Virus record (IMG/VR): IMGVR_UViG_3300032931_001151
Location: 150,201-214,200 of that record
Reading direction: 5' to 3' (one strand)
DNA length: 64,000 bases
Of the stretch, positions 28,653 to 58,150 are shown piece after piece. The notes under the pieces are model-generated. The model searched no databases. It was given only the letters and a program-made list of their open reading frames with translations, and was not told where the DNA came from. Each line of letters starts with the position of its first letter. Position 1 is the first letter of the stretch. Both the position numbers and the translations under genes were made by a program.

Positions 28653-28653
28653 A

Positions 28654-38668: not shown

Positions 38669-38694
38669 TATAATATCCTTAATGGGAGGATATT

Positions 38695-39723: not shown

Positions 39724-40642
39724 CAATATTTTAGTATTAGGTGGATCGGGATTAGTTGGAAGTTCAATAATTAGAAATCTTAAAGCTAAAGGATATTCTA
39801 ATATACACTCACCTAGGAGTTCTACTCTCAATTTATTAGATAAGACCGATGTATGTGCGTATATGTCGGAAATACAACCGGAGGTTGTAGTTATGTGTGC
39901 GGCAAAAGTTGGCGGCATTTCTGCAAATATCAAATATCCAGCCGAATTTGGGTATATAAATGGAATGATGAGTTTAAATGTAATTGATTGTTCTTATAAG
40001 AATAGAGTTAATAAATTACTTTACTTGGGTAGTAGTTGTATATATCCAAGAAATTGTCCGCAGCCTATGACAGAGGATAGTTTATTACAGGGACAATTTG
40101 AGCCAACAAATGAAATGTATGCTCTTTCAAAGGTGTTTGGATTAAAACTTTGTGAGGCATATAATAAGCAATACGGAACTAACTTCATAACTGTTCAACC
40201 ATGTAACATATATGGGGTTGGTGATAATTTTAATCCGGAGAATAGTCACGTTGTTGCTGGATTAATAGGAAAATTTCATAAAGCAAAAATTAATAATACC
40301 CCTTCAATAAGTATGTGGGGCACCGGAAATGCAAAACGAGAACTTATGTACGTAGATGATTGTGCCGAGGCTTGTACCTTTCTTCTTGAAAATTATAACG
40401 ATTCACAATTTATTAATGTTGGCACCGGAGTAGATATTACTATTAAAGAATTGTCCGAATTAGTTAAAGAAATAGTTGGATATAACGGGGAACTTACTTG
40501 GGATATCTCTAAACCAGACGGCATGCCTAGAAGAGTTCTTAATGTATCTAAAATAAATGCACTTGGATGGAAGCACACAATAAATATAAAGGAAGGTCTT
40601 CAAAAGACTTACGAGTGGTACTTAAAGAATGTGGGGAATTAA
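39713..40642 (+). CDS. fcl: GDP-L-fucose synthase / GDP-colitose synthase (Fcl/ColC family)
   Basis: GGSGLVG; AAKVGGI; LGSSCIYP; YALSK; SHV...LI; KPDGMPRR. Confidence 0.92.
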   Translation: MKNDNILVLGGSGLVGSSIIRNLKAKGYSNIHSPRSSTLNLLDKTDVCAYMSEIQPEVVVMCAAKVGGISANIKYPAEFGYINGMMSLNVIDCSYKNRVNKLLYLGSSCIYPRNCPQPMTEDSLLQGQFEPTNEMYALSKVFGLKLCEAYNKQYGTNFITVQPCNIYGVGDNFNPENSHVVAGLIGKFHKAKINNTPSISMWGTGNAKRELMYVDDCAEACTFLLENYNDSQFINVGTGVDITIKELSELVKEIVGYNGELTWDISKPDGMPRRVLNVSKINALGWKHTINIKEGLQKTYEWYLKNVGN

Positions 40643-41469
40643 TGATTAATACTATTATTTGGAGCAAAGATAGAGCTTGTCAATTAGATTTAACCCTTAA
40701 TACATATAAAAAATATTTTACCGAGTGGAAAGAACAACAAGTAAATATAATATATACTTATTCTAATCAGTTATATCATCAGGGATATGAAATAGTAAAG
40801 GCGAAACATCCGGAATTTAATTGGATAAAAGAGACTAACTTTAGACAAGACACTATAAATTGTTTTAATAAGTATAGAAGAACATATACATCTTTCGTCG
40901 TTGACGATGATGTGTTTATTGATTATTTTTCATTGAAGAGTGACGAATTTAGAATTTTTCAAAATGAGCCTAGCATAATATGTGTTAGTCCTAGAATGGC
41001 ACCATATGTTAATTATTGTTATCCTGCCAATTTAGATAGTCCACCCCCCCAGTTCCTATCTCAATACGATAAAAGGGTCTGGAATTGGAAATTGGGACAC
41101 CTCCGAGGGGATTGGGCATATGCCGCAAGTGTTGCTTGCCATCACATTTTTAGATCCGAAGACTTAGAGTATCCAATCAATAATATCCCATTTAAATTTG
41201 CTAATTCGTTTGAAGGTAATTGTTTACTTGGACATATTGATAATATAATTGGCCCTAAAAGACCCTATATGGTGTGCTTTGAAACATCTAAATGTATATG
41301 TTCGGAGAATAATAAGGTTCAAAACGAAAATCAAAATAGAAACGAGAATAGTCATCCCTTAGAATATATGAATGATATGTTGCTACAAGGAAAGAGATTA
41401 TGCCCTAATATAAACCATCAAGCAAGAATTAATGCTTGTCATGGCCCAGTACAAATCAAATGGATTTAA
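40642..41469 (+). CDS. Putative GT-A glycosyltransferase
   Basis: IIWSKDRACQL; VDDD. Confidence 0.55.
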   Translation: MINTIIWSKDRACQLDLTLNTYKKYFTEWKEQQVNIIYTYSNQLYHQGYEIVKAKHPEFNWIKETNFRQDTINCFNKYRRTYTSFVVDDDVFIDYFSLKSDEFRIFQNEPSIICVSPRMAPYVNYCYPANLDSPPPQFLSQYDKRVWNWKLGHLRGDWAYAASVACHHIFRSEDLEYPINNIPFKFANSFEGNCLLGHIDNIIGPKRPYMVCFETSKCICSENNKVQNENQNRNENSHPLEYMNDMLLQGKRLCPNINHQARINACHGPVQIKWI

Positions 41470-41479
41470 AGGAAAACAA

Positions 41480-42688
41480 ATGAAGTATCCTCTTGCTACC
41501 GAGTCTTGGGACGAAAAAGAAATCAATGCCGCATGCGAAGTTATAAAGTCCATGAAGTGTACTATGGGTGATAGATGCAAACAATTTGAGCAAGAGTTTG
41601 CTAAAATGTTCGGGAGTAAATATGCTATTTTTAGCAATTCGGGATCTTCCGCTAATTTATTAATGCTATCCGCATTAATGTATAGAAAAAATGGTCTAAA
41701 ATTAGAAATTGGAGATGAAGTAATAGTTCCTACAGTTTCTTGGAGTACTACTTATTACCCTATACATCAAAATGGATTAGCGTGTTGTTTTGTTGATATT
41801 GACAAAGACACGTTAAACATAGATTGTAATAAGATAGAAGCCGCTATTACTCCTAAAACAAAAGCTATATTAGCTGTAAATCTTTTAGGAAATCCTAACG
41901 ATTTTGATAGACTTAATGAAATATGTGTAAAGCACAATTTAATTTTACTTGAAGATAATTGTGAGTCTATGGGTGCTTTATACAAAGGAAAATATTGCGG
42001 ATCTATAGGACTAATGGGTTCTTTTAGTACGTTTTTTAGCCACCATATTAACTCAATTGAGGGCGGAATAACATTAACTAACGACGAAGAATTATATCAA
42101 ATAATGATCTCATTAAGAGCGCACGGATGGACACGAGGGTTGCCCAATAAGAATTTTGTTCATGATAAAGATGGTGTTGCTTTTAACGATTTATTTAGAT
42201 TCGTTTTACCGGGATATAATCTAAGACCAAATGAGGTATTTGCCGCTCTAGGTCTAGAACAACTAAAGAAGTTGCCCAAATTCATTGAAGATAGAATAAA
42301 AAATGCGGAATACTTTAATACAAGAATGGGTTATATTAAAAATAAATATCCAAACATGTTCACTACTCAATCCATTACTTTAAACTCAACCTCTTCTTGG
42401 TTTGGATTTGCTTTCGTTTTAGATTCGGAATTGAAAGGAAAGCGACTTGAAGTGGTTGAAGGGCTTACAATAGCTAATATTGATTGTAGACCAATCGTAG
42501 CAGGCAATTTCTGTAAGAACCCGGTCATTCAGCACATGAAAACGAGAATTAGTGGAAATACTAACTACGCAAATCATATAGATGAAAATGGGTTATTTAT
42601 TGGAAACAATCAAGGTAATATTAAAGATCAAATAGACCACTTTGCTAATACTTTTGATGCAATTATAGCAAGTATTCTTTCTAAATAG
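41480..42688 (+). CDS. colD: GDP-4-keto-6-deoxy-D-mannose 3-dehydratase (ColD, PLP-dependent)
   Basis: YPLA..SW; SGSSANLLM; VSWSTTYYP; VNLLGNP; LEDNCESMGA; FFSHH (His in place of the Schiff-base Lys); RAHGWTR; PGYN.RP. Confidence 0.88.
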   Translation: MKYPLATESWDEKEINAACEVIKSMKCTMGDRCKQFEQEFAKMFGSKYAIFSNSGSSANLLMLSALMYRKNGLKLEIGDEVIVPTVSWSTTYYPIHQNGLACCFVDIDKDTLNIDCNKIEAAITPKTKAILAVNLLGNPNDFDRLNEICVKHNLILLEDNCESMGALYKGKYCGSIGLMGSFSTFFSHHINSIEGGITLTNDEELYQIMISLRAHGWTRGLPNKNFVHDKDGVAFNDLFRFVLPGYNLRPNEVFAALGLEQLKKLPKFIEDRIKNAEYFNTRMGYIKNKYPNMFTTQSITLNSTSSWFGFAFVLDSELKGKRLEVVEGLTIANIDCRPIVAGNFCKNPVIQHMKTRISGNTNYANHIDENGLFIGNNQGNIKDQIDHFANTFDAIIASILSK

Positions 42689-42711
42689 TGAAACTATAGC
42701 AAGAATACTTG

Positions 42712-43551
42712 CTATTTAATTTTTTTGTATATTTTAACTAAATGAGCGAACGAGCTATTAGGATGATATATTCTAAAGTTAGTTCTTGCCAATAGTAGTA
42801 AATCAACAAAAGCATCTTCTACCGAATCGGTCGGTGTGTATACATTATTTGACCAACCGCCGTTTTGTTGTTTGGACACATATTTTTTATCAGATCTAAT
42901 AACAATATTTCTTTTATCTTTTTCTTTTATATATCGTTCATATTGAGGTGAATCCGAGCATACAAAGAAACTCCAGTTTGACATTACACTCATGCTATCC
43001 AAATAGTAATCGGCGTTTATTCCAGAATCTTCAAAGTCTGTACCTCTTGCATGAACGCCGATATAATCTTTATGTAAGTTAGCATTTTTCCAAAATTCAT
43101 CCACTTTATCAATAATATTTTTATTTATAGTAAGATAATATTGAAATATAGCCGTATGAGAGTCTATGCTTATATCGGGTAAGAATGTATTAGAGAATAC
43201 GACTAAATTTTCCGTTTTATCTTCGATTATTTTTTTGGTGTCAATTAAAGTACTACCATATTTTTTTATTAAGTCTCTCATCCCGGAAAGTTTGTTTAGA
43301 TTGTATTCATAATCACCCGCATCACTTGGACACCATACTTTAACATTAGATAGTAGTGATAGCTCCGATTCCTTTATGAATTTTATGTTTTTATTTGAAA
43401 ATAGGGATTCAAATGGTGCGAGACACCTTAAAGTTGGTTCCCATACTACTACAAGTTCTCTCCCGGTAAGATTAGCAATAACCCAACATGAAGCAATTGG
43501 CTTTAATCTATTCCCAATTCCCCCAGAACAATAACAAATTATACGACTCAT
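42712..43551 (-). CDS. Fucosyltransferase-like GT (GT11/GT23/NodZ-like)
   Basis: GGIGNRL; IGVHARGTD; FVCSDS; DLLLLA...SSF. Confidence 0.75.
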   Translation of the reverse strand: MSRIICYCSGGIGNRLKPIASCWVIANLTGRELVVVWEPTLRCLAPFESLFSNKNIKFIKESELSLLSNVKVWCPSDAGDYEYNLNKLSGMRDLIKKYGSTLIDTKKIIEDKTENLVVFSNTFLPDISIDSHTAIFQYYLTINKNIIDKVDEFWKNANLHKDYIGVHARGTDFEDSGINADYYLDSMSVMSNWSFFVCSDSPQYERYIKEKDKRNIVIRSDKKYVSKQQNGGWSNNVYTPTDSVEDAFVDLLLLARTNFRIYHPNSSFAHLVKIYKKIK

Positions 43552-44231
43552 ACATCTACCCAAGGCTTAGGTTGTCTAGGATCATGTCCCCATTTACTCA
43601 CAAATAACTCGGTGTTGTGTCCTATAATATTCCACGATCTATCATTATCCGCATAGTTTTTTCCTAAATGATATGTTAAAGTTCCTAGTTGTTGTGGTGC
43701 GGACTTTGTATATCCAAATTGTCTTAATGTTAATCCTATATCTTGATCTTCATGGCCATAGTGTCCGTTGTATCTTTCGTCATAATAACCAATTTCTTTT
43801 AACACATCATTTTTGAACCCTATATTAGCACACGAGAACCAAGCATTAGCATTAGCGAAATTATCAGAAGGAAATTGTATTATTCCTCTTGATATAGGAA
43901 AATTCTCTAATGAATGTAAGTGATTTTCAATAAATGTTTGAGATTGTGGAACACAATCGTCATCAAGAATTATGATATCCGGCGAATTACACATTTTCAT
44001 TGCTTCGTTTAGTCTTGCAACTTTAGTGTATCCCTCATCCTTAGCCCATAAATATCTTGAAACTATTCCGAATTTATTCGGATCAATCATATGGTGTGAT
44101 TTACTACCATCATCGGTAACTATTAAATTAAAATTGGTTATAGTTTGATACATCAATTTTTGCAAAGTTTGTTGTAAAAACTCGCTTCTATTATATGTAA
44201 CTATAATAATATCAACATCTTTAATTTTCAT
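43548..44231 (-). CDS. GT2 glycosyltransferase
   Basis: IIVTYNR; VTDDGS; LDDDC; YGHEDQD. Confidence 0.85.
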   Translation of the reverse strand: MKIKDVDIIIVTYNRSEFLQQTLQKLMYQTITNFNLIVTDDGSKSHHMIDPNKFGIVSRYLWAKDEGYTKVARLNEAMKMCNSPDIIILDDDCVPQSQTFIENHLHSLENFPISRGIIQFPSDNFANANAWFSCANIGFKNDVLKEIGYYDERYNGHYGHEDQDIGLTLRQFGYTKSAPQQLGTLTYHLGKNYADNDRSWNIIGHNTELFVSKWGHDPRQPKPWVDV

Positions 44232-44234
44232 ATT

Positions 44235-44936
44235 TCATTCCCAAAATACTTGGTTTTCTCTTTTTTTACCATAAGCGTCTACTATTAACGGAAAGCACAC
44301 TTCAAAAAAGTATCTATCTTTAAGATTCGTAGTGAAGAATTCTTCGGTGCTATTGTCTAAAAACCACTTTACTATTTTACCTTTTATAGCATAATGCGTT
44401 AATAACCACATAGTATTTGTTGGAATAGTTTCCGAATTTATGGGAATTTTCATATAAGAAGATATTACTTCTAAATTTTTACTAATTTTCATATCAAAAT
44501 TTCTTGCTATATGTGCCCAGCCACCAATTTCATCATTTTCAAGAATCTCATCATATTCTTTTCTCTTTTCAGCAAATTGCATAAAATAATCTCGGCATGA
44601 GATATACCATACACTATCTAGCGGATAGCTAATTCCTTTAGAATGCATAAAATATACATTTTCATAATCTTCTCTATTATCCTTCATCAATTTTAATGCC
44701 GATTGGAATCCGGATACATCGGAATTTACAGCTAAGTCGGGATCAACTAATGCGATATGAGCCTCTGGTAGTGTTGATTCAATTAAATCAATCCATGCTA
44801 AATCTGATTCGGCATTCACTCCAATATATACATCACAATCTCCAAAGTAATCTCTAATGTAACTTAAATATATTCCCGATCGATGTATAGTTGAATTTGG
44901 AATCCACGAAGAGAATACTACCGCATTTTTTTTCAT
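44235..44936 (-). CDS. Hypothetical, possibly GT-like
   Basis: YFMHSKG motif; embedded in the GT operon. Confidence 0.45.
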   Translation of the reverse strand: MKKNAVVFSSWIPNSTIHRSGIYLSYIRDYFGDCDVYIGVNAESDLAWIDLIESTLPEAHIALVDPDLAVNSDVSGFQSALKLMKDNREDYENVYFMHSKGISYPLDSVWYISCRDYFMQFAEKRKEYDEILENDEIGGWAHIARNFDMKISKNLEVISSYMKIPINSETIPTNTMWLLTHYAIKGKIVKWFLDNSTEEFFTTNLKDRYFFEVCFPLIVDAYGKKRENQVFWE

Positions 44937-44964
44937 TTTTTTAATCCTTTAATAATATTATACA

Positions 44965-46320
44965 CTAAAATCCTATTTTTTCATTAGGAGAAAATGGAAA
45001 ATTATTTATATTTAAATAGTTACCTATTACCGATTTGTATTGACTATTCTTAAGTGTATGTGTTATATTTAAGAATTCTTGAACAACTTCAGTATCAAGA
45101 AAAGGATATCTTCCTTCTTGTGAATAACTTCCCGTAACAAATTCGTCTTTTTTAAGATATGAGCACATACTACTACTATAAAACGACGCCCAAATAGGTT
45201 TATTATTTAGTTTCGTTGGAAATATAGTTTCTAAATTCTCGGGAAATACTCCTAGGAAATTTGAATGTTGGTATTTTGATGAGCCGTTCCAAGCATAATC
45301 TGAAAATAATTCATCCGCTCCCGCTCCGCTCATAAAGACTTTTCTATCATCTAATTTTGCTTTTGAACATACATAAGAAAGGCCATTAGACCCATTATCA
45401 TCCCATAAAGATAGATATGATTCCGAATAATTAGATCTCGCTGAATAAATTGTGTATTTAAACTCTTCGGTGTTGTCTAATAGATATTGGTGTGCCATAT
45501 TTCGCATACTAGGGGTTATAGTTAAAACTTCTAATTCGCAATTTGGATAGGACGTTAATATATTATATCTTTTATCTAATATCTCTTTATTTTCCGACCC
45601 TATTACACTAAATGCTTTAAATTTCGCCCCTTGCTTAATCATCTCACATATTAATGCTCCGCTATCATATCCACTTGACATTCCGATAAATAATTTTTGC
45701 GACATGTTTTGACAAGAACGTTTTTTTATACTATTTGAGAATGCTTTATTCCAATCATCAAAGTTTGTTTTATATTGATCTAAATTGAAGTCATAAATAG
45801 TTTTGGTTTCATAAATCCCGGTTAACATATCAAAAATAAGTGTAGTATTAGCATCAAACATCTTTATATTGCTATAAGTTTCTTCAAGCCCACTTTTATA
45901 TGACGCCACTCCTATATCTTTACCTTCTATGGCATACCATAACGGCTTCGTGCAAAAAACATCCCCCGTTACTATTAATATATTATTTTTAAAATCGGCC
46001 AATACTATTGCGAATTCTCCATCAAGCTTTTTTACAAAATCATTTCCATATTTTTTATAAAGCGGAATAATACATTTAGTATCATTATCATAGTCCCCAA
46101 ATTCTTTAAAGTTATATATCTCTCCATTAAAGATAATTACTATATCATCATCAACTAATGGTTGTGGAGTAAAAGTTCCGGTAATGCTTAGTAAATTATG
46201 AAGAAAAGTACATCCTTTATAATCTATAATATTAGTGGAATCCGGTCCACGCAATTTCATAAATCTATTTCTATGATCTATATTATCAATATTTTTTGTT
46301 GAAAATAGGATACTACACAT
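44965..46320 (-). CDS. AsnB-type glutamine amidotransferase
   Basis: N-terminal MC; RGPD; FNGEIYN; SSGYDS; SGAGADELF; RYPFLD. Confidence 0.88.
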   Translation of the reverse strand: MCSILFSTKNIDNIDHRNRFMKLRGPDSTNIIDYKGCTFLHNLLSITGTFTPQPLVDDDIVIIFNGEIYNFKEFGDYDNDTKCIIPLYKKYGNDFVKKLDGEFAIVLADFKNNILIVTGDVFCTKPLWYAIEGKDIGVASYKSGLEETYSNIKMFDANTTLIFDMLTGIYETKTIYDFNLDQYKTNFDDWNKAFSNSIKKRSCQNMSQKLFIGMSSGYDSGALICEMIKQGAKFKAFSVIGSENKEILDKRYNILTSYPNCELEVLTITPSMRNMAHQYLLDNTEEFKYTIYSARSNYSESYLSLWDDNGSNGLSYVCSKAKLDDRKVFMSGAGADELFSDYAWNGSSKYQHSNFLGVFPENLETIFPTKLNNKPIWASFYSSSMCSYLKKDEFVTGSYSQEGRYPFLDTEVVQEFLNITHTLKNSQYKSVIGNYLNINNFPFSPNEKIGF

Positions 46321-46328
46321 AATTTTCC

Positions 46329-47033
46329 TTATTTTGGGCCGCTACTAATATGACCACGAACTTGAGGCATTAGTCTATTACATCCTAAAGAGCCATCAGA
46401 ATTAAACCCGTTAGCATATCCTGGTAATATTTTTAATTCAATTCCAGTTTTCCAAACACATCTTGGAAAACTTAATTGATCTCTTGAACTAAATTTTTCA
46501 ATTTCATTCCACCACATCTCATTAAATTCTATCACATTACGGGTATTTTTTCTAATTGAGACTGGCAATTCAAATAATCCAAAGTTTTTTGGAAATCCTT
46601 CCTTTTCATATGATTGTATTTGGCTATCTATTAAATTGATATGATCATAATTTAATTCTTTTAATATCTTTGACTCTTCATAAGCACAATTTCGTTGATT
46701 GTGCTTAAATACCCCAATTTCAAGTTCTTTCAAATAATCTCTAATTATTATTCTAGGATCCTCAACTACGGCATGAGATACGTCGGCCCATAACCAATAA
46801 TCGTACATTGGTAAAATTCTATGTGGTAAAATTTTGTAGTATTTAGCATTTCTTCTATTAGAGTACATGTCCCCAATATGTCTTTTTTCTAAAGGAATTT
46901 GTCTCCATATAGTAGAATTAGGCCAAGGTCTATCAACGAAGGCATAGTAATCAACATTAGAATGGATTATAGTCGGATTGACTAGACTTTCTCTATCGCC
47001 ACATAATGAAGTTATTATTGCAATTTTATTCAT
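46329..47033 (-). CDS. DUF616-type glycosyltransferase
   Basis: R.AKYYKILPH; W.D; H..RNC.YEE; WW.EI....RDQLSF. Confidence 0.75.
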   Translation of the reverse strand: MNKIAIITSLCGDRESLVNPTIIHSNVDYYAFVDRPWPNSTIWRQIPLEKRHIGDMYSNRRNAKYYKILPHRILPMYDYWLWADVSHAVVEDPRIIIRDYLKELEIGVFKHNQRNCAYEESKILKELNYDHINLIDSQIQSYEKEGFPKNFGLFELPVSIRKNTRNVIEFNEMWWNEIEKFSSRDQLSFPRCVWKTGIELKILPGYANGFNSDGSLGCNRLMPQVRGHISSGPK

Positions 47034-47797
47034 TCTAATCTTTCCGGTTTTAAGATATAGTCGGAATGCTTTTCTAATACATACTTTTGTTCTTTTTGAG
47101 TTATCTCTATATTATCCCTTACTTGAGACGATATAGACTTTTCCCATATTCTAATACTAACTAAAAATTCATTAATAAGCTTTGGGGGTCCGTATTTTTT
47201 ATGTAATCTATAAAATAATTCACAATCCATTAGCCATATAAGTTCTTCATCAAAAAAATTATCATTATTTTTAAAATATATAGCACTAGGACATCCTAAC
47301 TCATTATATCCTTGTAATATATCATCGGTATATTTTGGGAATTGCGGTTTATGTTTTATTCCATTATATATTTGATTTGCATTAGAAATGTGATTAAATC
47401 CTATAGCGCCCCAATTATTGCCATTTTTATATTCTCTTATTATTTTATCAAGACAATCTATATCATAAAACATATCATCTTGGAACATGGGCTTTATAAT
47501 TTCTCCTTTAGAGTTCTTTATCCCCATATTTACGTTTGCCGATGAATTTCCTCTTTTATAATTATGCCTCATATAATTTATGAGGATATTTGATCCCATA
47601 AACTTAGATTTCAAATACATTTCAATTTCATTATTTTCCGAATGGTCTGTGATATTAATTTCATAATTTTTATACGTTTGACATATTATAGATTTCATTA
47701 GCTCATTAAGATATTTTATTCCGTTACCACTCATTTCATAACATGGAATACAAATAGAGATTTTACACATTGAATTTTTCCCATAGATAATGTGCAA
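47030..47797 (-). CDS. GT2 glycosyltransferase
   Basis: SICIP.YE; ITDHS; N..IKNSKGEII..MFQDD; LMDCE. Confidence 0.8.
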   Translation of the reverse strand: MHIIYGKNSMCKISICIPCYEMSGNGIKYLNELMKSIICQTYKNYEINITDHSENNEIEMYLKSKFMGSNILINYMRHNYKRGNSSANVNMGIKNSKGEIIKPMFQDDMFYDIDCLDKIIREYKNGNNWGAIGFNHISNANQIYNGIKHKPQFPKYTDDILQGYNELGCPSAIYFKNNDNFFDEELIWLMDCELFYRLHKKYGPPKLINEFLVSIRIWEKSISSQVRDNIEITQKEQKYVLEKHSDYILKPERLE

Positions 47798-48638
47798 AAT
47801 TCTTTTCTCCTCTTAATAAGTTTTTAGCAATTTTATAGTTCTTAGTACTTCCGTTTCTATAAGTATTAATTATGATATCCATCATATCGTTAATATTCTT
47901 ATTAGTTATATCAATATGAGATTCGTTAGTGAATATTTTAGATACTTCCGATGCTCCCCAATAAATCGGAATACTATTACACAAGATAGGATCATAGAAT
48001 TTTTCAGTTACCCAATATCTATAAGAGGCATTTTCAATTGCTATAGAATATTCATATGGTGAGAAAGCATCCGGCTTATGTTCTACTATTCCCTTAACTC
48101 TTGAATCTCCTTGATAGTAACGACATCCTCTTCCGTATATATGAATATCTAAATTAGTTTTTAATATTCTTTTTATTAGTTCATGTCTTAATGCATGTCC
48201 GCTAAAGTATGTTTTATCCGATGCTATTATAGACATTCTATATGGTTTACTGACATTTTCAAATTCGTCTTTTTCTCCGTAAATTGGGACTTGCGGAGCT
48301 AAATAGCAAATACCTTCTTGAAAACATGGCCAATTCGGAAATCTTTTCTTATCGTGGCATATATACGTTCCAATATTTTCTTTAATATATGGCAAATAAC
48401 TAGACGAATCTAATATCTCAAAAGGCTCATGCATTAACCCTAATACTCTTTCTTTTGGTACTTTTAATTGCGGAGTTCCATGATTTATAATAACCGCATG
48501 AGTATAGTTATCATCGTCAACAATTTTCATATTTTTATATTCTGCTTTTCCATATCCCCAAGATTTAAAAGCATTTCTTAATCCATATGATGGTGCAAAG
48601 TCGGAAAATATTTGTACTCTTATTTCGTCCATGGCCAA
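47763..48638 (-). CDS. GT10 (alpha-1,3/4-fucosyltransferase-like)
   Basis: YEYSIAIEN...YWVTEKFYD..L...IPIYWG. Confidence 0.8.
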   Translation of the reverse strand: MAMDEIRVQIFSDFAPSYGLRNAFKSWGYGKAEYKNMKIVDDDNYTHAVIINHGTPQLKVPKERVLGLMHEPFEILDSSSYLPYIKENIGTYICHDKKRFPNWPCFQEGICYLAPQVPIYGEKDEFENVSKPYRMSIIASDKTYFSGHALRHELIKRILKTNLDIHIYGRGCRYYQGDSRVKGIVEHKPDAFSPYEYSIAIENASYRYWVTEKFYDPILCNSIPIYWGASEVSKIFTNESHIDITNKNINDMMDIIINTYRNGSTKNYKIAKNLLRGEKNFAHYLWEKFNV

Positions 48639-49411
48639 CTCCTTACATAAGCTTTTAAATCTTCTTTTGACATTCCAATGATTTTTTTATATTCTTCTTC
48701 GTTTTGTTTAAATCTTGGATTGGTTGTATCGCTATTAAATGTTCTAGAATGGTCTAAATGGAATAATTTACCATCAATCGATCCTATTTTATATCCCAAT
48801 TTTCCAAATCTATCTCTTCTCTCAACATCTTCAGGTCCCCAAGACATAAAGTTTTCATTTTCCATACCTCCTTCTACGTATTTTGATTTATTCATAAATA
48901 AACATCCGCCGGGCGGTGGTGACGGATGTTCAAATGATACTAATGGATCAATTCCTGCTAAATTGAGAGTTAATCCAAATGAATTATGGTATTTACTTGG
49001 AATATTATGATTCGGCTTATTAAAAGGATAGCAAAAATCTAATATATTACCTCTAACAACTTGTGCGGCATTAAGATATTGATGTGGATAAAAAACTACA
49101 TCCGAGTCTTGGCTAACTATTATTGGGGTTTTAGCCCTCTTCGCCATAATATTTAGGTTTTTTGTTTTATGGAATAAGTCGGAGTCGTTTTGTCTATATA
49201 TGTATGTTAATTTTTTATTCCATTCTGCTCTCATTAATTGTGGAAATAGTGCTTGTTTCCCTTCTTCACATATGATGACAGAAGTATCAAAGTGCTTAAA
49301 AAGATACGAGAGAAGTAAATCTATTATTTTCTTTCTATCTTCTGATTCTATTTTAAGAGGTATTAAAAACGTTACGTCACGCAAATTAGACATTATTTTA
49401 TCCATCCCCAA
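48620..49411 (-). CDS. GT2/GT7-C-like glycosyltransferase
   Basis: QDSDV; GGCLF; NENF.SWGPED. Confidence 0.8.
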   Translation of the reverse strand: MGMDKIMSNLRDVTFLIPLKIESEDRKKIIDLLLSYLFKHFDTSVIICEEGKQALFPQLMRAEWNKKLTYIYRQNDSDLFHKTKNLNIMAKRAKTPIIVSQDSDVVFYPHQYLNAAQVVRGNILDFCYPFNKPNHNIPSKYHNSFGLTLNLAGIDPLVSFEHPSPPPGGCLFMNKSKYVEGGMENENFMSWGPEDVERRDRFGKLGYKIGSIDGKLFHLDHSRTFNSDTTNPRFKQNEEEYKKIIGMSKEDLKAYVRSWPWTK

Positions 49412-50151
49412 GTTGCCACTTGTGTTTTCAATGCTTCTCTTGAAAGAGATGATATTCTATGAAATTCCATCTCGTTATCTCTATATGCTTTATGTTCGGT
49501 GTTTGCGCTATTAGGACTTCTCGGATGCGATAGATGATAAAGAGCGCCCTCTATTCTTGAAATTCTATATCCTAATGTTCCAAAACGTTTTAACCTTTCA
49601 TCATCTTCCCAACCCCATGACACAAATCGTTCATTTTCCATTCCACCTTCAATGAACTTTTGCTTATTCCAGAATATAGCACCACCAACGGATTTAGGAT
49701 GAATTAAGTTGCCATTTGATGGTGTTATATTCTCAATCGTTAGATTATTTTGAACATTTGATATGTGTGGTTCAATTAAATCTATAAATCGTCCATCATA
49801 TGGGTAAACCATATCATATTTATTCTCTCTAATAACTCTTACGGCTTGGACATATTGTGCAATTGGGAATAAAACGTCGGTGTCATAGTTAACTATAATT
49901 GGCGTAGTTGATTGTTTGGCTAGAACATTAAGACAATACGTTCTATGCATAAGATAATCACCACGAGGAATGAAAATATGCTTGAATTTTCCAACATCTT
50001 TAAATTTTGATTCCGTGTCATTTTCGCAAATTAATATATTTGTATCAAAATGTTTATTGAGATAATTTATAATAATTCTAATATTTCGTAATCTTTCGGG
50101 GGTGTCTAATTTGAAGGGGATATTAAATGTCACGTCGGTTAAATTTATCAT
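49393..50151 (-). CDS. GT2/GT7-C-like glycosyltransferase, paralog of the adjacent gene
   Basis: YDTDV; GGAIF; NERFVSWGWED. Confidence 0.8.
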   Translation of the reverse strand: MINLTDVTFNIPFKLDTPERLRNIRIIINYLNKHFDTNILICENDTESKFKDVGKFKHIFIPRGDYLMHRTYCLNVLAKQSTTPIIVNYDTDVLFPIAQYVQAVRVIRENKYDMVYPYDGRFIDLIEPHISNVQNNLTIENITPSNGNLIHPKSVGGAIFWNKQKFIEGGMENERFVSWGWEDDERLKRFGTLGYRISRIEGALYHLSHPRSPNSANTEHKAYRDNEMEFHRISSLSREALKTQVATWGWIK

Positions 50152-50774
50152 ATTTCTTTTATTAAACCTTTATCTAAATAGTGGTTATATAATACCGTTT
50201 CTGCTTGTTGTGGATGATAATTAAAACAATCGCTTTTATCTAAATATTTTTCCCAATAATACTTGTATGGGTATTTTCTAGCCGGATCAAATCCTGTCAC
50301 GAATATTTCAGCATCTTTGAATCTATATAAACATGATTCTATAGTAGTCATTCCTGAGTCTGGGTAATACCATTCCATGTTATTTTTTAAATTCTCGCTT
50401 ATTGTCTTCATTTTATTGTATAAATTGTCGTAAATGTAAGGATCTACAAATATAAATTCTAATGGTTTAAATCTACCAAAATGTTCTCTAGCCCTAACTC
50501 TATTATTATGATGTCCTTTTGCAAATTTGTCTGGTATCCAAACTTCATTGCATAGTTTGAAATTTTCTATTAATCTATGACTCCCTAATAATCCCGCCGT
50601 AGCCCCTTCTCCCGTTATCATCATAGAAATAATATCTACTTTTTTACCAACATAACTTTCCCACCCTTCAATGAGAAAATTATTCATCCTAATAACCCTA
50701 TCACAAGAATCAATGAAATCTCCATTTTTAACCATGGAAGCCTTATATCCATTTGCAACAATCGCTATTCTCAT
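50148..50774 (-). CDS. GT29 (sialyltransferase-like) protein
   Basis: IAIVANG...NGDFIDSCDRVIRMN (sialylmotif L-like); PDSG...I...L......VTGFD (motif S-like). Confidence 0.65.
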   Translation of the reverse strand: MRIAIVANGYKASMVKNGDFIDSCDRVIRMNNFLIEGWESYVGKKVDIISMMITGEGATAGLLGSHRLIENFKLCNEVWIPDKFAKGHHNNRVRAREHFGRFKPLEFIFVDPYIYDNLYNKMKTISENLKNNMEWYYPDSGMTTIESCLYRFKDAEIFVTGFDPARKYPYKYYWEKYLDKSDCFNYHPQQAETVLYNHYLDKGLIKEI

Positions 50775-51589
50775 TTATGATTTCTCCAAAATTCAGAAGC
50801 CTCTTGGATTTGTTGATTAATATTTTGTTTAACTACTCCGCTATCTCTTTGGCATACTTTTACTTTCCATTTAGCATATTCTTCGTCATTTTCCGGTGGG
50901 TGGATGATGGGTATAGAATCTGACATTTGCCAAGTAAATCCTTTCTGTCCCAAATCCATAAGGAAATAAGCATCATCACCGGCGTATACGCCCATAACCC
51001 TATATCCGCCAATCGTTTCCCATGCCCTTCTTGACATAAATAGGCATCCGCCCGCAATTCCACTCGGTTGATTAGGCCATACAACTTTTTCGTTGAATGT
51101 TTTGCCATTAAATGTTATAGAATAATCATTTACATTTTCATAACAAGTTTTATAATGACATCCGTGTCCGTTTTGTTGTAATCCTATTAACCCAAATGGT
51201 TTGCCTTTTATAGTCTCTGTCTTATTAGCCATAGCAATAAGACGATTGAAGAATTCTTCATTATCTTGGGGGAATAGTATATCCGAATCGGCTGACATAA
51301 TATACTTGTGGTGAGACTTTAAGAACTTTTTCGTTAAAGTGTTTACTACTACGGCTTTACCTACATTATCATTAAATGATAATATGTCTTTTTTTCCAAA
51401 TTGGTCTTTAATGGTTGATAAAATTGGTGCCCACTGTTGTTTATCTTTGCACCATCCGCCGAAGCAAACGTCAACATTCTCTACTTTGTGTTCTTTTAAG
51501 TATTTGCCCAAAGATATTAGAGAATTTATGTTTCTTTCTGTAACTCTAGTTATTGGTCCAAATATTGGCTGACAAAGTAAAATTGACAT
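50771..51589 (-). CDS. GT2-like glycosyltransferase
   Basis: NVGKA; ADSDI; AGGCLF; YAGDDA. Confidence 0.7.
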   Translation of the reverse strand: MSILLCQPIFGPITRVTERNINSLISLGKYLKEHKVENVDVCFGGWCKDKQQWAPILSTIKDQFGKKDILSFNDNVGKAVVVNTLTKKFLKSHHKYIMSADSDILFPQDNEEFFNRLIAMANKTETIKGKPFGLIGLQQNGHGCHYKTCYENVNDYSITFNGKTFNEKVVWPNQPSGIAGGCLFMSRRAWETIGGYRVMGVYAGDDAYFLMDLGQKGFTWQMSDSIPIIHPPENDEEYAKWKVKVCQRDSGVVKQNINQQIQEASEFWRNHK

Positions 51590-51673
51590 AAATATTCCTT
51601 ATATTGTATAATGTAATTATACCATAGAAGATATTTATTTTCCCTTCTAAATATATGTAATAGGAGATAATTT

Positions 51674-51844
51674 ATGATTATTCGTAGATATATTAATGGA
51701 AAGAAAGTTGACATAGAGGTTAATACGACACCTCCATCGCCAATTCCTCCACCAAATCCTAATCAACCTACACCAACTCAAACTAATCCTCAAGCACCAC
51801 CAGTTCCTCCACCGAGAAAAGGTTGTGGGTGTAAACGAAAATGA
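51674..51844 (+). CDS. 56-aa Pro-rich micro-protein ending RKGCGCKRK (not in ORF track)
   Basis: AGGAG SD; TGA overlaps the ATG of the next gene (ATGA). Confidence 0.7.
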   Translation: MIIRRYINGKKVDIEVNTTPPSPIPPPNPNQPTPTQTNPQAPPVPPPRKGCGCKRK

Positions 51845-55598: not shown

Positions 55599-55622
55599 AT
55601 TATATAATTAATTTATGATATA

Positions 55623-55650
55623 ATTACCTCCGTGGAAATACGGAGGTAAT
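55623..55650 (+). terminator. Intrinsic terminator after RNR
   Basis: ATTACCTCCGT-ggaaat-ACGGAGGTAAT plus T-tract. Confidence 0.85.
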
Positions 55651-55654
55651 TTTT

Positions 55655-58072: not shown

Positions 58073-58150
58073 GGGCAAAAGTCTAGCTGGTATGCTAGTA
58101 AACGTCTGATAAGCGTTTTTAGGTGAGTTCGATTCTCACTTTGCCCACCA
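58073..58150 (+). tRNA. tRNA-Ile(GAT)
   Basis: GGGCAAA/TTTGCCC; CT-GAT-AA; TTCGATT; CCA. Confidence 0.85.

What the first reader, a model, noticed from the sequence alone, without database searches (positions are those of the whole stretch)
42712..51589. Eleven-gene glycan assembly operon, comparable to giant-virus glycosylation clusters
Seen: tightly overlapping minus-strand genes for several GT2, GT10, GT11/23-like, GT29-like and DUF616 proteins and an amidotransferase. None has an obvious TM segment, and no flippase, Wzy or polyprenyl-phosphate transferase is present in the window. Upstream are an extended -10 (TGGTATAAT) and a late-like AATAAATA (51632-39, minus). Inference: cytoplasmic, lipid-carrier-independent synthesis of a complex glycan on virion proteins (shielding, as shown for some mycobacteriophages) rather than host O-antigen conversion.
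Basis: partly seen in the sequence, partly recalled or inferred. Interest (0 to 1): 0.72.

Follow-up and report, generated by a model that had tools for sequence, protein, structure and literature searches.

The report
Phage-encoded complex glycan assembly island
An uncultured marine T4-like phage carries a compact set of about a dozen soluble sugar-adding enzymes plus its own deoxy-sugar supply genes, several of them found only in viruses, but the sequence cannot tell whether the glycan ends up on the phage particle or on the infected cell's surface.

Summary
Window 42712-51589 has eleven back-to-back minus-strand genes: GT-A/GT2-type, GT10, NodZ/GT23-like, GT29-like and DUF616 glycosyltransferases, plus an AsnB-type amidotransferase. 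None has a TM segment.

The system is larger than flagged:
- A convergent plus-strand module (38695-42688) encodes GMD, a GDP-fucose-synthase/ColC-like enzyme, a twelfth GT-A enzyme and ColD. The apparent "aminotransferase" is the colitose 3-dehydratase.
- A second 6-deoxyhexose module lies at 27627-29952.
- Two more GT genes lie at 10509-12353 and 16483-17526.

The 214-kb T4-like genome has no phosphoglycosyltransferase and no flippase- or polymerase-like multi-TM protein. It also lacks a CMP-sugar synthetase and any known route to hydroxylated DNA bases.

Both glycan operons start from extended -10 promoters of the class that precedes the replication genes here.

Gene order is conserved in uncultured relatives of 214-415 kb. 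Neither the first GT nor the GT29-like enzyme turned up in motif scans of 185,579 prokaryote species; the first GT also has no match in 50,697 phage records.

Comparable fucose/GT islands are known in cyano- and pelagimyophages and are assumed there to remodel host LPS. The acceptor is unresolved: virion or phage protein about 0.45, host envelope about 0.35. This is a new variant of a known kind.

The parts
50771..51589 (-). g1, first gene of the operon: GT-A (GT2-like) glycosyltransferase with an invariant DSD motif. It is the most conserved member of the cluster.
   Evidence: Pfam gives only a marginal GT21 hit. The family has at least 147 metagenomic clusters at 41% identity or more, all on contigs of 415 kb or less. 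The AF2 model has pLDDT 96 and a GT-A fold (GlfT2, WrtF, K4CP, TarP; TM 0.5-0.59). The nearest structures are viral: an uncultured marine phage at TM 0.83 and Yasminevirus at TM 0.71, and atlas viral clusters at TM 0.87. Cellular AFDB clusters reach only TM 0.64 or less at 10-17% identity. No hit in 185,579 prokaryote species, in 50,697 phage records or in PHROGs.
50148..50774 (-). g2: TM-less 'mini' GT29-like transferase of the sialyl/ulosonic-acid type, dependent on a CMP-sugar donor.
   Evidence: Pfam Glyco_transf_29, 49 bits. The family profile matches ST6Gal1 4mps over residues 2-197 at E 7e-7, and also ST3Gal1 and ST8Sia3. The family alignment conserves VxNG, IDxCDxVIRxN, SGM...GFD, YYW/H and HPxxAE, which correspond to sialylmotifs L, S, III and VS (motif definitions from PMC5811610). 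Not found in the motif scan of prokaryote genomes, in cultured phage records or in PHROGs. There are 161 representative clusters at E<=1e-10, mostly 185-230 aa.
49393..50151 (-). g3: GT-A glycosyltransferase (Glyco_transf_7C / phrog_15655), paralogue of g4.
   Evidence: Pfam 29.6 bits. phrog_15655 at E 7e-52 and a 'galactosyl transferase' phrog_1721. 41% identical to g4. Relatives carry 2-5 copies, and there is a homologue in Synechococcus phage S-CAM7.
48620..49411 (-). g4: GT-A glycosyltransferase, paralogue of g3.
   Evidence: Pfam Glyco_transf_7C, 21.6 bits, below cut-off. phrog_15655 at E 2e-53. 41% identity to g3 with shared DxD and WGxED motifs.
47763..48638 (-). g5: GT10-type (alpha-1,3/4-fucosyltransferase family) enzyme. 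Probable fucosyl or colitosyl transferase.
   Evidence: Pfam Glyco_transf_10, 42 bits. Conserved at 36-57% identity in L002, L006, L013 and L016. No PHROG family.
47030..47797 (-). g6: GT2 glycosyltransferase.
   Evidence: Pfam Glycos_transf_2, 43.6 bits. Also found by the genome scan.
46329..47033 (-). g7: TOD1/MUCI70 (DUF616) glycosyltransferase-like protein.
   Evidence: Pfam PF04765, 81 bits. phrog_26101 'glycosyltransferase'. 53% identical in L016.
44965..46320 (-). g8: AsnB-type glutamine amidotransferase. Inferred role: amidation of a sugar carboxylate (uronic or ulosonic acid).
   Evidence: GATase_7, GATase_6 and Asn_synthase. TIGR01536, 135 bits. E. coli AsnB 1ct9 at E 8e-11. The Cys2 nucleophile (MCSILF) and an SSGYDS PP-loop are present. 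The substrate is inferred from the role of AsnB-like enzymes such as WbpS in O-antigen clusters (general knowledge).
44235..44936 (-). g9: unknown 233-aa protein, possibly an RgpF-like (rhamnosyl) transferase.
   Evidence: No Pfam or PHROG family. The atlas feature search places it among viral clusters, some carrying RgpF or DUF8361, including Nucleocytoviricota; this is a lead only. A homologue lies near g1 in L014, and RgpF-domain genes sit next to g1 homologues in L015 and L017.
43548..44231 (-). g10: GT2 glycosyltransferase.
   Evidence: Pfam Glycos_transf_2, 51 bits. phrog_2456.
42712..43563 (-). g11: NodZ-like (GT23-type) fucosyltransferase-family enzyme, last gene of the operon.
   Evidence: Pfam NodZ, 32 bits against a cut-off of 28.3. 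41% identical in L016.
51616..51639 (-). Promoter region of the GT operon: extended -10 TGGTATAAT (51624-51616), 35 nt before the ATG, preceded by AATAAATA (51639-51632).
   Evidence: Sequence. TGNTATAAT occurs 42 times in the genome; 21 copies lie 8-80 nt upstream of genes and 16 lie in the 4% of the genome that is non-coding. The same motif class precedes uvsY, gp46/47, the GT4-like gene and GMD. L002 and L003 have GATAAATA plus TGATATAAT at the same place.
42696..42715 (+). Hairpin followed by a T-run, between the two convergent operons: terminator-like.
   Evidence: 8-bp stem ATAGCAAG/CTTGCTAT, then TTAATTTTTTT.
38695..39723 (+). GDP-mannose 4,6-dehydratase (GMD/ColB), first gene of the convergent sugar-nucleotide operon. 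The extended -10 TGATATAAT lies at 38666-38674.
   Evidence: Pfam GDP_Man_Dehyd, 451 bits. NCBIfam gmd equivalog, 493 bits against a cut-off of 415. Promoter.
39713..40642 (+). GDP-4-keto-6-deoxymannose epimerase/reductase (GDP-L-fucose synthase / ColC-like).
   Evidence: 314 bits to E. coli GDP-fucose synthetase 1bsv. NCBIfam Fcl, 420 bits, below the 500 cut-off.
40615..41469 (+). Twelfth glycosyltransferase: a GT-A fold enzyme with an invariant DDD motif, embedded in the GDP-sugar operon. Candidate colitosyl or fucosyl transferase.
   Evidence: No Pfam or PHROG family. The family is metagenomic only. AF2 pLDDT 93. Foldseek matches GnT-I and TarP at E 4e-8. Invariant D97, D98 and D99. Same position in L006, L013, L016 and L018.
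41432..42688 (+). ColD, the PMP-dependent GDP-4-keto-6-deoxymannose 3-dehydratase. This is the committed step to GDP-L-colitose.
   Evidence: 429 bits, E 1.7e-127, to E. coli O55 WbdK/ColD 2gms over the full length. The SHH motif, with His in place of the aminotransferase Lys, is conserved. Perosamine synthases score only 131 bits.
27627..29952 (+). Second sugar-nucleotide module: an RmlB-like NDP-glucose 4,6-dehydratase (27627-28652) and a cupin + RmlD-like epimerase/reductase fusion (28654-29952). The product would be a 6-deoxy-L-hexose such as rhamnose.
   Evidence: TIGR01181 at 197 bits, 6bi4 at 132 bits, rmlD at 41 bits; weak cupin hits in the N-terminal 150 residues; those residues are not hydrophobic, so the Polysacc_synt_C hit is not a flippase.
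10509..12353 (+). Additional 614-aa protein with two GT2-type domains, immediately after uvsW.
   Evidence: No PHROG family. Only weak partial hits in phage records.
16483..17526 (+). Additional GT-B (GT1/GT4-like) glycosyltransferase with an extended -10 promoter, lying between gp46/47 and the DNA polymerase gene.
   Evidence: Pfam weak hit. phrog_7162 'glycosyltransferase' at E 6e-32. Promoter.

Best explanation
The locus is the core of a phage-encoded, cytoplasmic glycan factory in an uncultured marine T4-like myovirus (214 kb, 33% GC).

**Shown by sequence and structure comparison**
- One operon (38695-42688) makes GDP-L-colitose and/or GDP-L-fucose from host GDP-mannose. It encodes GMD, ColD and a fucose-synthase/ColC-like reductase.
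- A second module (27627-29952) makes a 6-deoxy-L-hexose.
- Twelve soluble glycosyltransferases lie in 38.7-51.6 kb, with two more elsewhere in the window, plus an AsnB-type amidotransferase.
- Both operons carry host-sigma70 extended -10 promoters like those before the replication genes. They face each other across a terminator hairpin.

**Inferred**
- The enzymes act one after another to build one defined, non-repeating, deoxyhexose-rich oligosaccharide of roughly ten or more residues.
- It probably contains an amidated acidic sugar and an ulosonic acid. The GT29-like enzyme would add the ulosonic acid from a host CMP-sugar such as CMP-Kdo.

**Acceptor (least certain step)**
- I rank the phage's own proteins, most plausibly virion proteins, slightly first.
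- They would be glycosylated directly in the cytoplasm, as in chloroviruses, mimiviruses and some mycobacteriophages.

Sub-confidences: about 0.9 that this is a working glycan-assembly system; about 0.45 for the protein/virion acceptor.
For: - **Gene identities.**
- **No lipid-carrier machinery in the genome.**
  - No protein with more than 4 hydrophobic segments.
  - No Bac_transf or Glycos_transf_4.
- **GTs are virus-specific; sugar-nucleotide enzymes are bacterial-type.**
  - g1 and the GT29-like enzyme have no relative in motif scans of 185,579 prokaryote species.
  - Neither has a match in 50,697 phage records.
  - The nearest structures to g1 are viral, at TM 0.83-0.87 and Yasminevirus 0.71. 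Cellular clusters reach 0.64 or less.
  - g1, the GT29-like enzyme, the GT10 enzyme, the embedded GT-A enzyme and the two-domain GT2 protein have no PHROG family.
  - By contrast, ColD scores 429 bits against the E. coli enzyme.
- **Conserved order implies one conserved product rather than serotype-tracking variation.**
  - L018 has the identical 11-gene order at 76-78% identity.
  - L016, a 415-kb contig with a different RNR class, has nearly the same order at 41-63% identity.
  - L002, L003, L006 and L013 share a core.
- **Long residence in the phage.** GC content of the cluster equals the genome average.
- **Distant mini-GT29 genes sit next to ulosonic-acid genes.** In L020 they lie beside NeuB, a CMP-sugar synthetase and Maf-type (MptE-like) genes. 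Maf-type enzymes glycosylate proteins (general knowledge).
- **DNA as acceptor is unlikely.** The genome has no thymidylate-synthase homologue, C5 methylase or Tet_JBP hit. The Tet_JBP search rang in no control genome, so that negative is weak.
Against: - No protein-directed initiating enzyme can be recognised. There is no Maf-like hit, and I recognised no other protein-directed GT type.
- g1 is a generic GT-A fold that does not reveal its acceptor.
- The promoters are of the early/replication class, not the late TATAAATA class that precedes structural genes. The cluster lies in the replication region, not among virion genes.
- Colitose, Kdo-type acids and amidated uronic acids are classic LPS constituents (general knowledge).
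- TM-less GTs are the norm for lipid-linked pathways too, and the host could provide the initiating enzyme, flippase and ligase.
- The literature on cyano- and pelagimyophage GT islands favours host O-chain modification (PMC9602691, PMC7029224), although that is also untested.
- There is no isolate, no virion proteome and no transcript data. No sequencing runs were listed.
Confidence: 0.45

Rival explanations
1. Host-envelope remodelling. The soluble GTs assemble the glycan on a host lipid carrier (undecaprenyl-PP-sugar made by the host's WecA/WbaP-type enzyme) or directly on lipid A-core. Host flippase, ligase and Lpt machinery then export it. The infected cell's surface changes early in infection, which would block superinfection, prevent progeny adsorbing to infected cells and debris, or deter grazers.
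For: - **Early-class promoters.** They are shared with the replication genes. In L006 and L013 the cluster follows the topoisomerase gene directly.
- **LPS-type sugar chemistry.**
  - ColD is a close homologue of the E. coli O55 O-antigen enzyme.
  - An AsnB-like amidotransferase is present, as in O-antigen and EPS clusters (one search lists an EPS amidotransferase model among the hits).
  - Bacterial GT29-like genes occur in marine Gram-negatives (PMC5811610).
- **Published interpretation.** Analogous islands in S-SCSM1 and in pelagimyophages are read this way (PMC9602691, PMC7029224).
- **Cultured precedent for the module.** S-CAM7 carries GMD, fucose synthase, a ColD-like gene, GT11 and a g3/g4 homologue.
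Against: - The genome has no initiating transferase, flippase, polymerase, ligase or ABC exporter.
- Twelve or more GTs exceed a typical O-unit.
- The conserved GTs g1, the GT29-like enzyme and the embedded GT-A enzyme have no cellular relatives, which is unexpected for enzymes acting on universal bacterial lipid-linked acceptors.
- Gene order is conserved across very divergent phages instead of varying like host serotype loci.
Confidence: 0.35
2. DNA hypermodification. The GTs decorate a hydroxylated base in phage DNA with an oligosaccharide, as T4 glucosylates hmC and as RB69 and DLP3 poly-arabinosylate 5-hydroxycytosine. The modification would protect against restriction and CRISPR.
For: - The cluster lies in the replication/nucleotide-metabolism region and has early promoters.
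- Phages are known to encode both sugar-nucleotide synthesis and several GTs for DNA modification (PMC13326640; bioRxiv 10.1101/2023.12.21.572611).
- In L002 and L003 the GT29-like gene follows a DNA N6/N4 methyltransferase gene.
- The separate GT4-like and two-domain GT2 genes sit among recombination and replication genes.
Against: - The genome has no thymidylate-synthase-family hydroxymethylase or hydroxylase, no C5 cytosine methylase and no Tet/JBP hit. The Tet/JBP search rang in no control genome, so that negative is weak.
- Fucosyltransferase-type (GT10, GT23) and sialyltransferase-type (GT29) enzymes act on glycans.
- A glycan of ten or more sugars on DNA is far beyond any known case and hard to package.
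Confidence: 0.04
3. Another product: a free or secreted oligo- or polysaccharide, or a glycolipid built on a membrane lipid. The first GT has a marginal GT21 (ceramide/diacylglycerol glucosyltransferase) hit. The product would serve, for example, as a decoy or matrix around the infected cell.
For: - Marginal Pfam GT21 hit for g1 (21.9 vs 21.7 bits).
- No acceptor-specific feature was found for any other hypothesis.
Against: - The hit is at threshold.
- g1 has no TM or amphipathic anchor detected.
- Its structural neighbours are generic GT2 enzymes.
- No exporter is encoded.
Confidence: 0.1

Closest known systems
'Cell-wall/LPS' gene islands of marine T4-like cyanomyophages (S-SCSM1, S-CAM7, S-SKS1, ACG-2014f) and pelagimyophages
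   Same: - T4-like marine myoviruses that carry GMD, a GDP-fucose synthase and a ColD-like dehydratase next to fucosyltransferase-family and GT2 genes.
- S-CAM7 also has a g3/g4 homologue.
- S-SCSM1 lists 13 such genes, including NodZ and alpha-1,2-FucT (PMC9602691).
- The function is unproven there as well.
   Different: - The capsid protein is only about 35% identical to those of cyanophages, and there is no psbA, so this is a different lineage.
- The cluster is larger (12-14 GTs) and sits in the replication region rather than beside tail fibres.
- It contains GTs absent from all 50,697 phage records: g1 and the GT29-like enzyme.
- It also has DUF616 and an AsnB-like amidotransferase.
Chlorovirus PBCV-1 and mimivirus virion glycosylation machineries
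   Same: - A virus-encoded GDP-mannose-derived deoxysugar pathway plus many soluble, virus-specific GTs. These are thought to build a complex non-repeating glycan in the cytoplasm without host ER/Golgi or lipid-carrier genes (general knowledge).
- g1 has a Yasminevirus structural relative, and relatives of g9 occur in Nucleocytoviricota.
   Different: - The host is a bacterium.
- No glycosylated virion protein is known.
- Similarity of individual GTs is remote (18% identity or less).
- Attachment to the virion is untested here.
Mycobacteriophage (Che8/Corndog-type) capsid and tail-tube O-glycosylation
   Different: - Those systems have 2-4 GTs and belong to actinobacteriophage siphoviruses.
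- I tested no homology to those GTs.
- No sugar-nucleotide modules of this kind are involved there.
E. coli O55 / O111-type colitose O-antigen gene clusters
   Same: - GMD + ColD + ColC-type reductase give GDP-L-colitose. ColD here scores 429 bits with the catalytic His conserved.
- Fucosyltransferase-family enzymes serve as colitosyltransferases in those clusters (general knowledge).
   Different: - Bacterial clusters also carry manB/manC, wzx and wzy and depend on WecA. None of these is encoded by the phage.
Phage DNA glycosylation systems (T4 alpha/beta-GT; RB69/DLP3 arabinosyl-5hoC; MT-TET-GT clusters)
   Same: Early-expressed phage GTs, sometimes with phage-encoded sugar-nucleotide synthesis, lying among replication genes (PMC13326640; 10.1101/2023.12.21.572611).
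   Different: - No enzyme that creates a hydroxylated base was found.
- The GT families here are of the glycan-extending type.
Bacterial TM-less GT29 sialyltransferase-like proteins of marine Gram-negative bacteria
   Same: Sialylmotifs L, S, III and VS are present; there is no TM domain and no disulfide cysteines (PMC5811610).
   Different: - This is a roughly 200-aa 'mini' form carried by phages.
- A motif scan found no prokaryote genome with a close relative.
- Neither the donor nor the acceptor is known.

Membership tests
T4-like (Straboviridae/Kyanoviridae-type) myovirus | gp23-type major capsid protein and a T4-type replication/recombination gene set | tested here: met
   Gp23 Pfam, 333 bits. 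UvsY, UvsW, gp46/47-like, family B DNA polymerase, gp32, gp44-type clamp loader, RegA, and both topoisomerase II subunits. TATAAATA late motif enriched upstream of genes.
GDP-L-colitose biosynthesis pathway | GDP-mannose 4,6-dehydratase | tested here: met
   NCBIfam gmd equivalog, 493 bits against a cut-off of 415.
GDP-L-colitose biosynthesis pathway | ColD: PMP-dependent 3-dehydratase with His replacing the aminotransferase Lys | tested here: met
   429 bits, full length, to 2gms/3gr9 ColD. SHH motif aligned.
GDP-L-colitose biosynthesis pathway | ColC-type epimerase/reductase, as distinct from GDP-fucose synthase | tested here: inconclusive
   The protein is fucose-synthase-like: 314 bits to 1bsv, and NCBIfam Fcl 420 bits against a cut-off of 500. 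Sequence alone cannot separate ColC, Fcl or dual activity.
CAZy GT29 (sialyltransferase-like) | Sialylmotifs L, S, III and VS in a GT-A variant fold | tested here: met
   Pfam PF00777, 49 bits. Full-length profile match to ST6Gal1, ST3Gal1 and ST8Sia3. Conserved motif residues in alignment A1.
CAZy GT29 (sialyltransferase-like) | Uses a CMP-activated ulosonic acid donor | not testable with these tools
   The genome has no CMP-sugar synthetase or NeuB, so a host donor would be required. In L020, distant family members sit beside NeuB and CTP_transf_3.
Wzx/Wzy- or ABC-transporter-dependent O-antigen/capsule gene cluster | Initiating polyprenyl-phosphate glycosyl-1-phosphate transferase | tested here: not met
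   No Bac_transf or Glycos_transf_4 match in the genome.
Wzx/Wzy- or ABC-transporter-dependent O-antigen/capsule gene cluster | Flippase/polymerase or Wzm/Wzt exporter | tested here: not met
   No ORF has more than 4 hydrophobic segments. The Polysacc_synt_C hit at 28654-29118 lies in a non-hydrophobic cupin-like domain. The LptF/G hit at 29995-30837 is below cut-off and lies in a lipobox + coiled-coil + TM protein.
Phage serotype-conversion systems (GtrABC, O-acetylase) | Membrane-embedded GtrA flippase and GtrC-type GT-C, or a membrane acyltransferase | tested here: not met
   No multi-TM proteins of that kind. Only weak GtrB-like PHROG hits to the GT2 domains.
Viral virion-protein glycosylation systems (chlorovirus, mimivirus, mycobacteriophage) | Virus-encoded GTs and sugar-nucleotide enzymes without lipid-carrier machinery | tested here: met
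Viral virion-protein glycosylation systems (chlorovirus, mimivirus, mycobacteriophage) | The glycan is covalently attached to capsid, tail or fibril proteins | not testable with these tools
   There is no isolate, proteome or glycan data. No recognisable protein-directed GT (no Maf-like hit).
Phage DNA glycosyl-hypermodification systems | An enzyme that makes a hydroxylated pyrimidine (TS-family hydroxymethylase/hydroxylase, or C5-MTase + TET) | tested here: not met
   No Thymidylat_synt, DNA_methylase or Tet_JBP match. The Tet_JBP search rang in no control genome, so that negative is weak.

The most novel reading that the evidence does not exclude
A lineage of large marine T4-like and jumbo phages carries a virus-restricted set of glycosyltransferases (the g1 family, an embedded GT-A family, g3/g4 paralogues and a mini GT29). 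Together with phage-made GDP-colitose/fucose and a 6-deoxyhexose, these enzymes would build a complex, conserved oligosaccharide directly on virion proteins in the bacterial cytoplasm. That would be a bacteriophage counterpart of chlorovirus and mimivirus glycosylation in Gram-negative hosts. It would include the first functional phage GT29-type ulosonic-acid transferase.
Probability: 0.4. Interest if true: 0.8.

Novelty: new variant of a known kind. Interest (0 to 1): 0.55.

Why it matters
**If the glycan decorates virions**
- Complex protein glycosylation would not be confined to giant viruses and actinophages. It would also occur in abundant marine myoviruses.
- That has consequences for particle stability, stickiness, grazing, host recognition and how virions are detected.

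**If the glycan goes to the host surface**
- It would be a lytic-phage-encoded complete 'serotype', which bears on superinfection exclusion and on carbon flow in infected cells.

**Either way**
- The island supplies several glycosyltransferase families with no cultured or cellular representative: g1, the embedded GT-A enzyme and a 200-aa GT29.
- It supplies a compact colitose pathway, useful for glycoengineering.
- It defines a concrete, clonable 13-kb unit with which the long-standing question 'what are the LPS-like genes of marine myophages for?' can be tested.

Tried and rejected
- **Cultured relatives.**
  - Megablast of the 10-kb region against 50,697 phage records gave no match.
  - tblastn of g1 and of the GT29-like protein against the same records gave no match.
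  - So no cultured relative is available.
- **Prokaryote genomes.** Motif scans of 185,579 species with the GT29-like and g1 profiles confirmed no relatives. One attempt failed because the alignment was too diverse.
- **Sequencing runs.** Two searches for public runs listed none. Expression timing could therefore not be read from transcripts, and read laying was not used.
- **'Relatives' search.** Not available for a virus record.
- **DNA-modification route.** No TS-family enzyme, C5 methylase or Tet_JBP hit.
- **Perosamine reading of the 'DegT' gene.** Rejected. It is ColD: 429 bits against 131 for perosamine synthases, with His in place of Lys.
- **Possible flippase or exporter leads.** Both rejected.
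  - The Polysacc_synt_C hit lies in a soluble cupin domain.
  - The LptF/G hit is below cut-off and lies in a lipoprotein-like TM protein with a late promoter.
- **gp23-like gene next to the cluster in L002 and L003.** It is a partial capsid-gene copy with no separate counterpart here.
- **Generic sigma70/terminator scan.** Promoter-like sites are no more frequent than in shuffles (86 vs 82.7). Only the genome-wide motif enrichment was used as evidence.
- **dN/dS against L005.** Uninformative: the two sequences are 100% identical.
- **Complex prediction (GT with capsid protein).** Not run. A transient enzyme-substrate pair is unlikely to score, and a pass would have moved the odds little.
- **Fold searches.** Those for g1 and the embedded GT gave only generic GT-A neighbours, which do not identify acceptors.

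Full report
**1. What is there**

The window is the last 64 kb of a 214,200-bp IMG/VR virus record. The same sequence lies on a 217,484-bp JGI contig and, 100% identical, on a second JGI contig.

The genome is a T4-like myovirus:
- It has a gp23-type capsid gene, only about 35% identical to cyanophage capsid proteins.
- The window holds UvsY, UvsW, gp46/47-like proteins, a family B DNA polymerase, a RecA/UvsX-like protein, a DnaB-type helicase, gp32, a clamp loader, RegA, a primase, both topoisomerase II subunits and a class II RNR.
- It has no psbA. GC content is 0.33.
- Its nearest structural and sequence relatives come from 'uncultured marine phage' and Tara Oceans data.

The eleven minus-strand ORFs of the finding are exactly as described. 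None has a hydrophobic segment.

**2. The system is larger than the finding**

*Convergent GDP-sugar operon (38695-42688, plus strand).* It runs into the 3' end of the cluster and is separated from it only by a hairpin with a T-run. It encodes four proteins:
- GMD, which passes the NCBIfam equivalog cut-off.
- A GDP-fucose-synthase/ColC-like epimerase-reductase.
- A 284-aa protein with no Pfam or PHROG family. It folds with pLDDT 93 as a GT-A glycosyltransferase with an invariant DDD motif.
- A protein that looks like a DegT aminotransferase but is ColD, the GDP-4-keto-6-deoxymannose 3-dehydratase of colitose synthesis. It scores 429 bits over the full length against the E. coli O55 enzyme and keeps the diagnostic His in place of Lys.

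*Second deoxysugar module (27627-29952).* It pairs an RmlB-like 4,6-dehydratase with a cupin + RmlD-like fusion.

*Two further GT genes.* They lie at 10509-12353 and 16483-17526.

*The unnamed gene g9 (44235-44936).* It groups with viral clusters that carry RgpF (rhamnosyltransferase-type) domains. This is a lead only.

In total the window encodes two sugar-nucleotide modules, 12-14 GTs, and an AsnB-type amidotransferase with an intact Cys2 nucleophile and PP-loop.

**3. What the genome lacks**

| Missing function | Evidence |
|---|---|
| Nucleotidyltransferase | |
| CMP-sugar synthetase | |
| NeuB | |
| Phosphoglycosyltransferase, either superfamily | |
| Protein with more than four hydrophobic segments | |
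| Maf-type protein glycosyltransferase | |
| Thymidylate-synthase-family enzyme | |
| C5 DNA methylase | |
| Tet/JBP (weak negative: rang in no control genome) | |

It follows that GDP-mannose, NDP-glucose and any CMP-ulosonic acid must come from the host. Any lipid-carrier or export step would also have to be host-provided. No known route to a glycosylatable DNA base was found.

**4. Expression signals**

- TATAAATA, the T4-type late motif, occurs 40 times. Of these, 22 lie 8-80 nt upstream of genes and 18 lie in the 4% of the genome that is non-coding. They precede mostly large genes in the structural part of the genome.
It is therefore not the late consensus.
- TGNTATAAT occurs 42 times, 21 of them upstream of genes. 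It precedes uvsY, the gp46/47 operon, the GT4-like gene, GMD (38666-38674) and the GT operon (51624-51616).
- The divergent small gene at 51674 has a perfect TTGACA-18-TATAAT promoter.
- In relatives, the g1 homologue has the same extended -10 (L002, L003; L016 approximately). In L006 and L013 the cluster simply follows the topoisomerase gene.

I infer that both glycan operons are transcribed by unmodified host RNA polymerase together with the replication genes.

Two signals could add late expression, and I cannot exclude it:
- A/GATAAATA is conserved just upstream of the extended -10 in this genome and in L002/L003.
- A TATAAATA lies inside the AsnB-like gene (45003-45010).

From general knowledge, early expression does not discriminate between the hypotheses, because chlorovirus GT genes are also expressed early.

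**5. Relatives and distribution**

| Locus | Contig | Cluster content |
|---|---|---|
| L018 | 18 kb; 76-78% aa identity | Same eleven genes in the same order |
| L016 | 415 kb; class Ia RNR | g1, two g3/g4-type GTs, GT10, GT2, DUF616, AsnB, two methyltransferases, NodZ; converging on ColD, the embedded GT-A and the reductase; 41-63% identity |
| L002, L003 | 232 kb, 59.5 kb | Shared core: g1, g3/g4 paralogues, GT10; GT29-like gene lies downstream of RNR |
| L006, L013 | 34.6 kb, 89 kb | Shared core: g1, GT29-like, g3/g4 paralogues (2-5 copies), GT10, GDP-sugar module |
| L015, L017 | 194 kb, 126 kb; non-T4-like large phages | g1 with RgpF-domain and other GTs, in smaller sets |

*The g1 family.*
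- It has at least 147 clusters at 41% identity or more, all on contigs of 415 kb or less.
- Scans with its most conserved motifs found nothing in 185,579 prokaryote species.
- tblastn found nothing in 50,697 phage records.
- Its closest structures are viral, at TM 0.83-0.87, with Yasminevirus at 0.71. Cellular AlphaFold clusters reach only generic GT2 similarity, TM 0.64 or less.

*The GT29-like protein.*
- It carries all four sialylmotifs and aligns over its full length with mammalian sialyltransferases.
- Like the bacterial GT29 proteins described by Petit et al. (PMC5811610), it lacks the TM stem and the disulfide cysteines.
- A profile search of 1.84 billion representatives finds 161 clusters at E<=1e-10, mostly 185-230 aa.
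- Members sit on phage-like marine contigs (L019). In L020, four copies lie beside NeuB, a CMP-sugar synthetase, Maf-like (MptE-like) genes, a sulfotransferase and a pyruvyltransferase. This supports a CMP-ulosonic-acid donor for the family.

**6. Mechanism**

*Shown.* The enzyme inventory and its organisation are established.

*Inferred.*
- Host GDP-mannose is converted to GDP-4-keto-6-deoxymannose. From there it goes to GDP-L-colitose (ColD plus reductase) and/or GDP-L-fucose.
- Host NDP-glucose is converted to a 6-deoxy-L-hexose.
- The GT10, NodZ-like and embedded GT-A enzymes are the candidates for adding these deoxysugars.
- The g3/g4 paralogues, the GT2s and DUF616 extend the chain.
- The AsnB-like enzyme amidates a carboxylate.
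- The GT29-like enzyme adds a host-derived ulosonic acid.
- With twelve or more GTs and no polymerase, the product should be one defined oligosaccharide rather than a repeat polymer.

*The acceptor is the open step.*

For a phage-protein (virion) acceptor:
- No lipid-carrier machinery is encoded.
- The GTs are virus-restricted while the sugar-nucleotide enzymes are bacterial-type.
- Gene order is conserved across very divergent phages.
- Some of the GTs have giant-virus affinities.

For a host-envelope acceptor:
- The sugar chemistry is LPS-like.
- The promoters are of the early class and the cluster lies among replication genes.
- TM-less GTs are normal for lipid-linked pathways.
- This is the prevailing reading for cyano- and pelagimyophage islands (PMC9602691, PMC7029224), though it is untested.

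My estimates are virion/phage protein 0.45, host envelope 0.35, other products 0.10 and DNA 0.04.

**7. Comparison and novelty**

Fucose/colitose-type sugar genes next to fucosyltransferase-family and GT2 genes are already known in cultured cyanomyophages:
- S-CAM7 carries GMD, fucose synthase, a ColD-like gene, GT11 and a g3/g4 homologue.
- S-SCSM1 has 13 such genes.

GT-rich islands are also described in pelagimyophages. The kind is therefore known, while its function is not. This case differs in four ways:
- Lineage: the phage is a distant T4-like virus without psbA.
- Size: 12-14 GTs.
- Position and promoter class: it sits among replication genes behind early-class promoters.
- Content: several GT families have no cultured-phage or cellular representative, including a mini GT29.

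I classify it as a new variant of a known kind and score interest at 0.55.

Noticed in passing
window 58073-63885: Array of 18 tRNA genes on the plus strand. It includes a tRNA with a CUA anticodon (60215-60287; ARAGORN labels it 'Pyl'), i.e. an amber-suppressor-like tRNA. The glycan genes read through normally under table 11, so no recoding was needed.
   Followed up: no
window 27627-29952: A second sugar-nucleotide module between gp32 and the topoisomerase II large subunit: an RmlB-like 4,6-dehydratase plus a cupin + RmlD-like fusion. No RmlA-type nucleotidyltransferase is present in the genome.
   Followed up: partly
window 10509-12353 and 16483-17526: Two further glycosyltransferase genes among recombination and replication genes: a 614-aa protein with two GT2-type domains directly after uvsW, and a GT-B (phrog_7162) gene with its own extended -10 promoter. 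Their targets are unknown, and DNA or protein acceptors are not excluded.
   Followed up: partly
window 29995-30837: 280-aa protein with a lipobox-like N-terminus (LLSC), a long coiled-coil-like middle part and three C-terminal TM helices. A TATAAATA late motif lies 29 nt upstream. It could be a spanin- or lysis-type protein. The weak LptF/LptG hit (E 0.005) is probably spurious.
   Followed up: partly
window 51583-51844: A perfect sigma70 consensus (TTGACA-18-TATAAT, 51583-51612) drives a 56-aa Pro/Thr-rich protein ending in CGCKRK. This gene is transcribed divergently from the GT operon and is conserved in L003 (43% identity). The next gene (51841-53004, 387 aa) belongs to phage-only clusters, and a homologue lies near g1 in L014.
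   Followed up: partly
window 45003-45010 (minus strand): A TATAAATA late-type motif lies inside the 3' end of the AsnB-like gene, 74 nt upstream of the last three genes of the operon. It may be an internal late promoter or a chance match: 22 of the 40 copies in the genome lie in coding sequence.
   Followed up: no
L020 9001-12227 and flanks: A 46-kb metagenomic contig carries a very rich glycan island:
- four mini-GT29 genes;
- a CgtA-like GT;
- NeuB and a CMP-sugar synthetase;
- three MptE-like (Maf/DUF115-type) genes;
- a sulfotransferase, a pyruvyltransferase and radical-SAM enzymes;
- a CysN/C-like sulfate-activation gene.

These lie beside peptide deformylase and DUF1257 genes.
   Followed up: no
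window 53346-55963; L002 and L016: This phage has a class II (B12-type) RNR followed by an HNH endonuclease gene. Relatives that share the glycan cluster (L002, L003, L016) have class Ia RNR with an ATP-cone at the same position.
   Followed up: no
L002 7884-8384; L003 7899-8384: A short (161-166 aa) ORF matching the C-terminal part of the gp23 capsid protein sits between RNR and the GT29-like gene in two relatives. It is a partial capsid-gene duplicate, and this genome has no separate counterpart.
   Followed up: partly
whole record G000: IMG/VR classes the record as a 'provirus', but the gene content is that of a lytic T4-like phage, and the parent JGI contig is only 3.3 kb longer (217,484 bp). 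The label is probably a trimming artefact.
   Followed up: no
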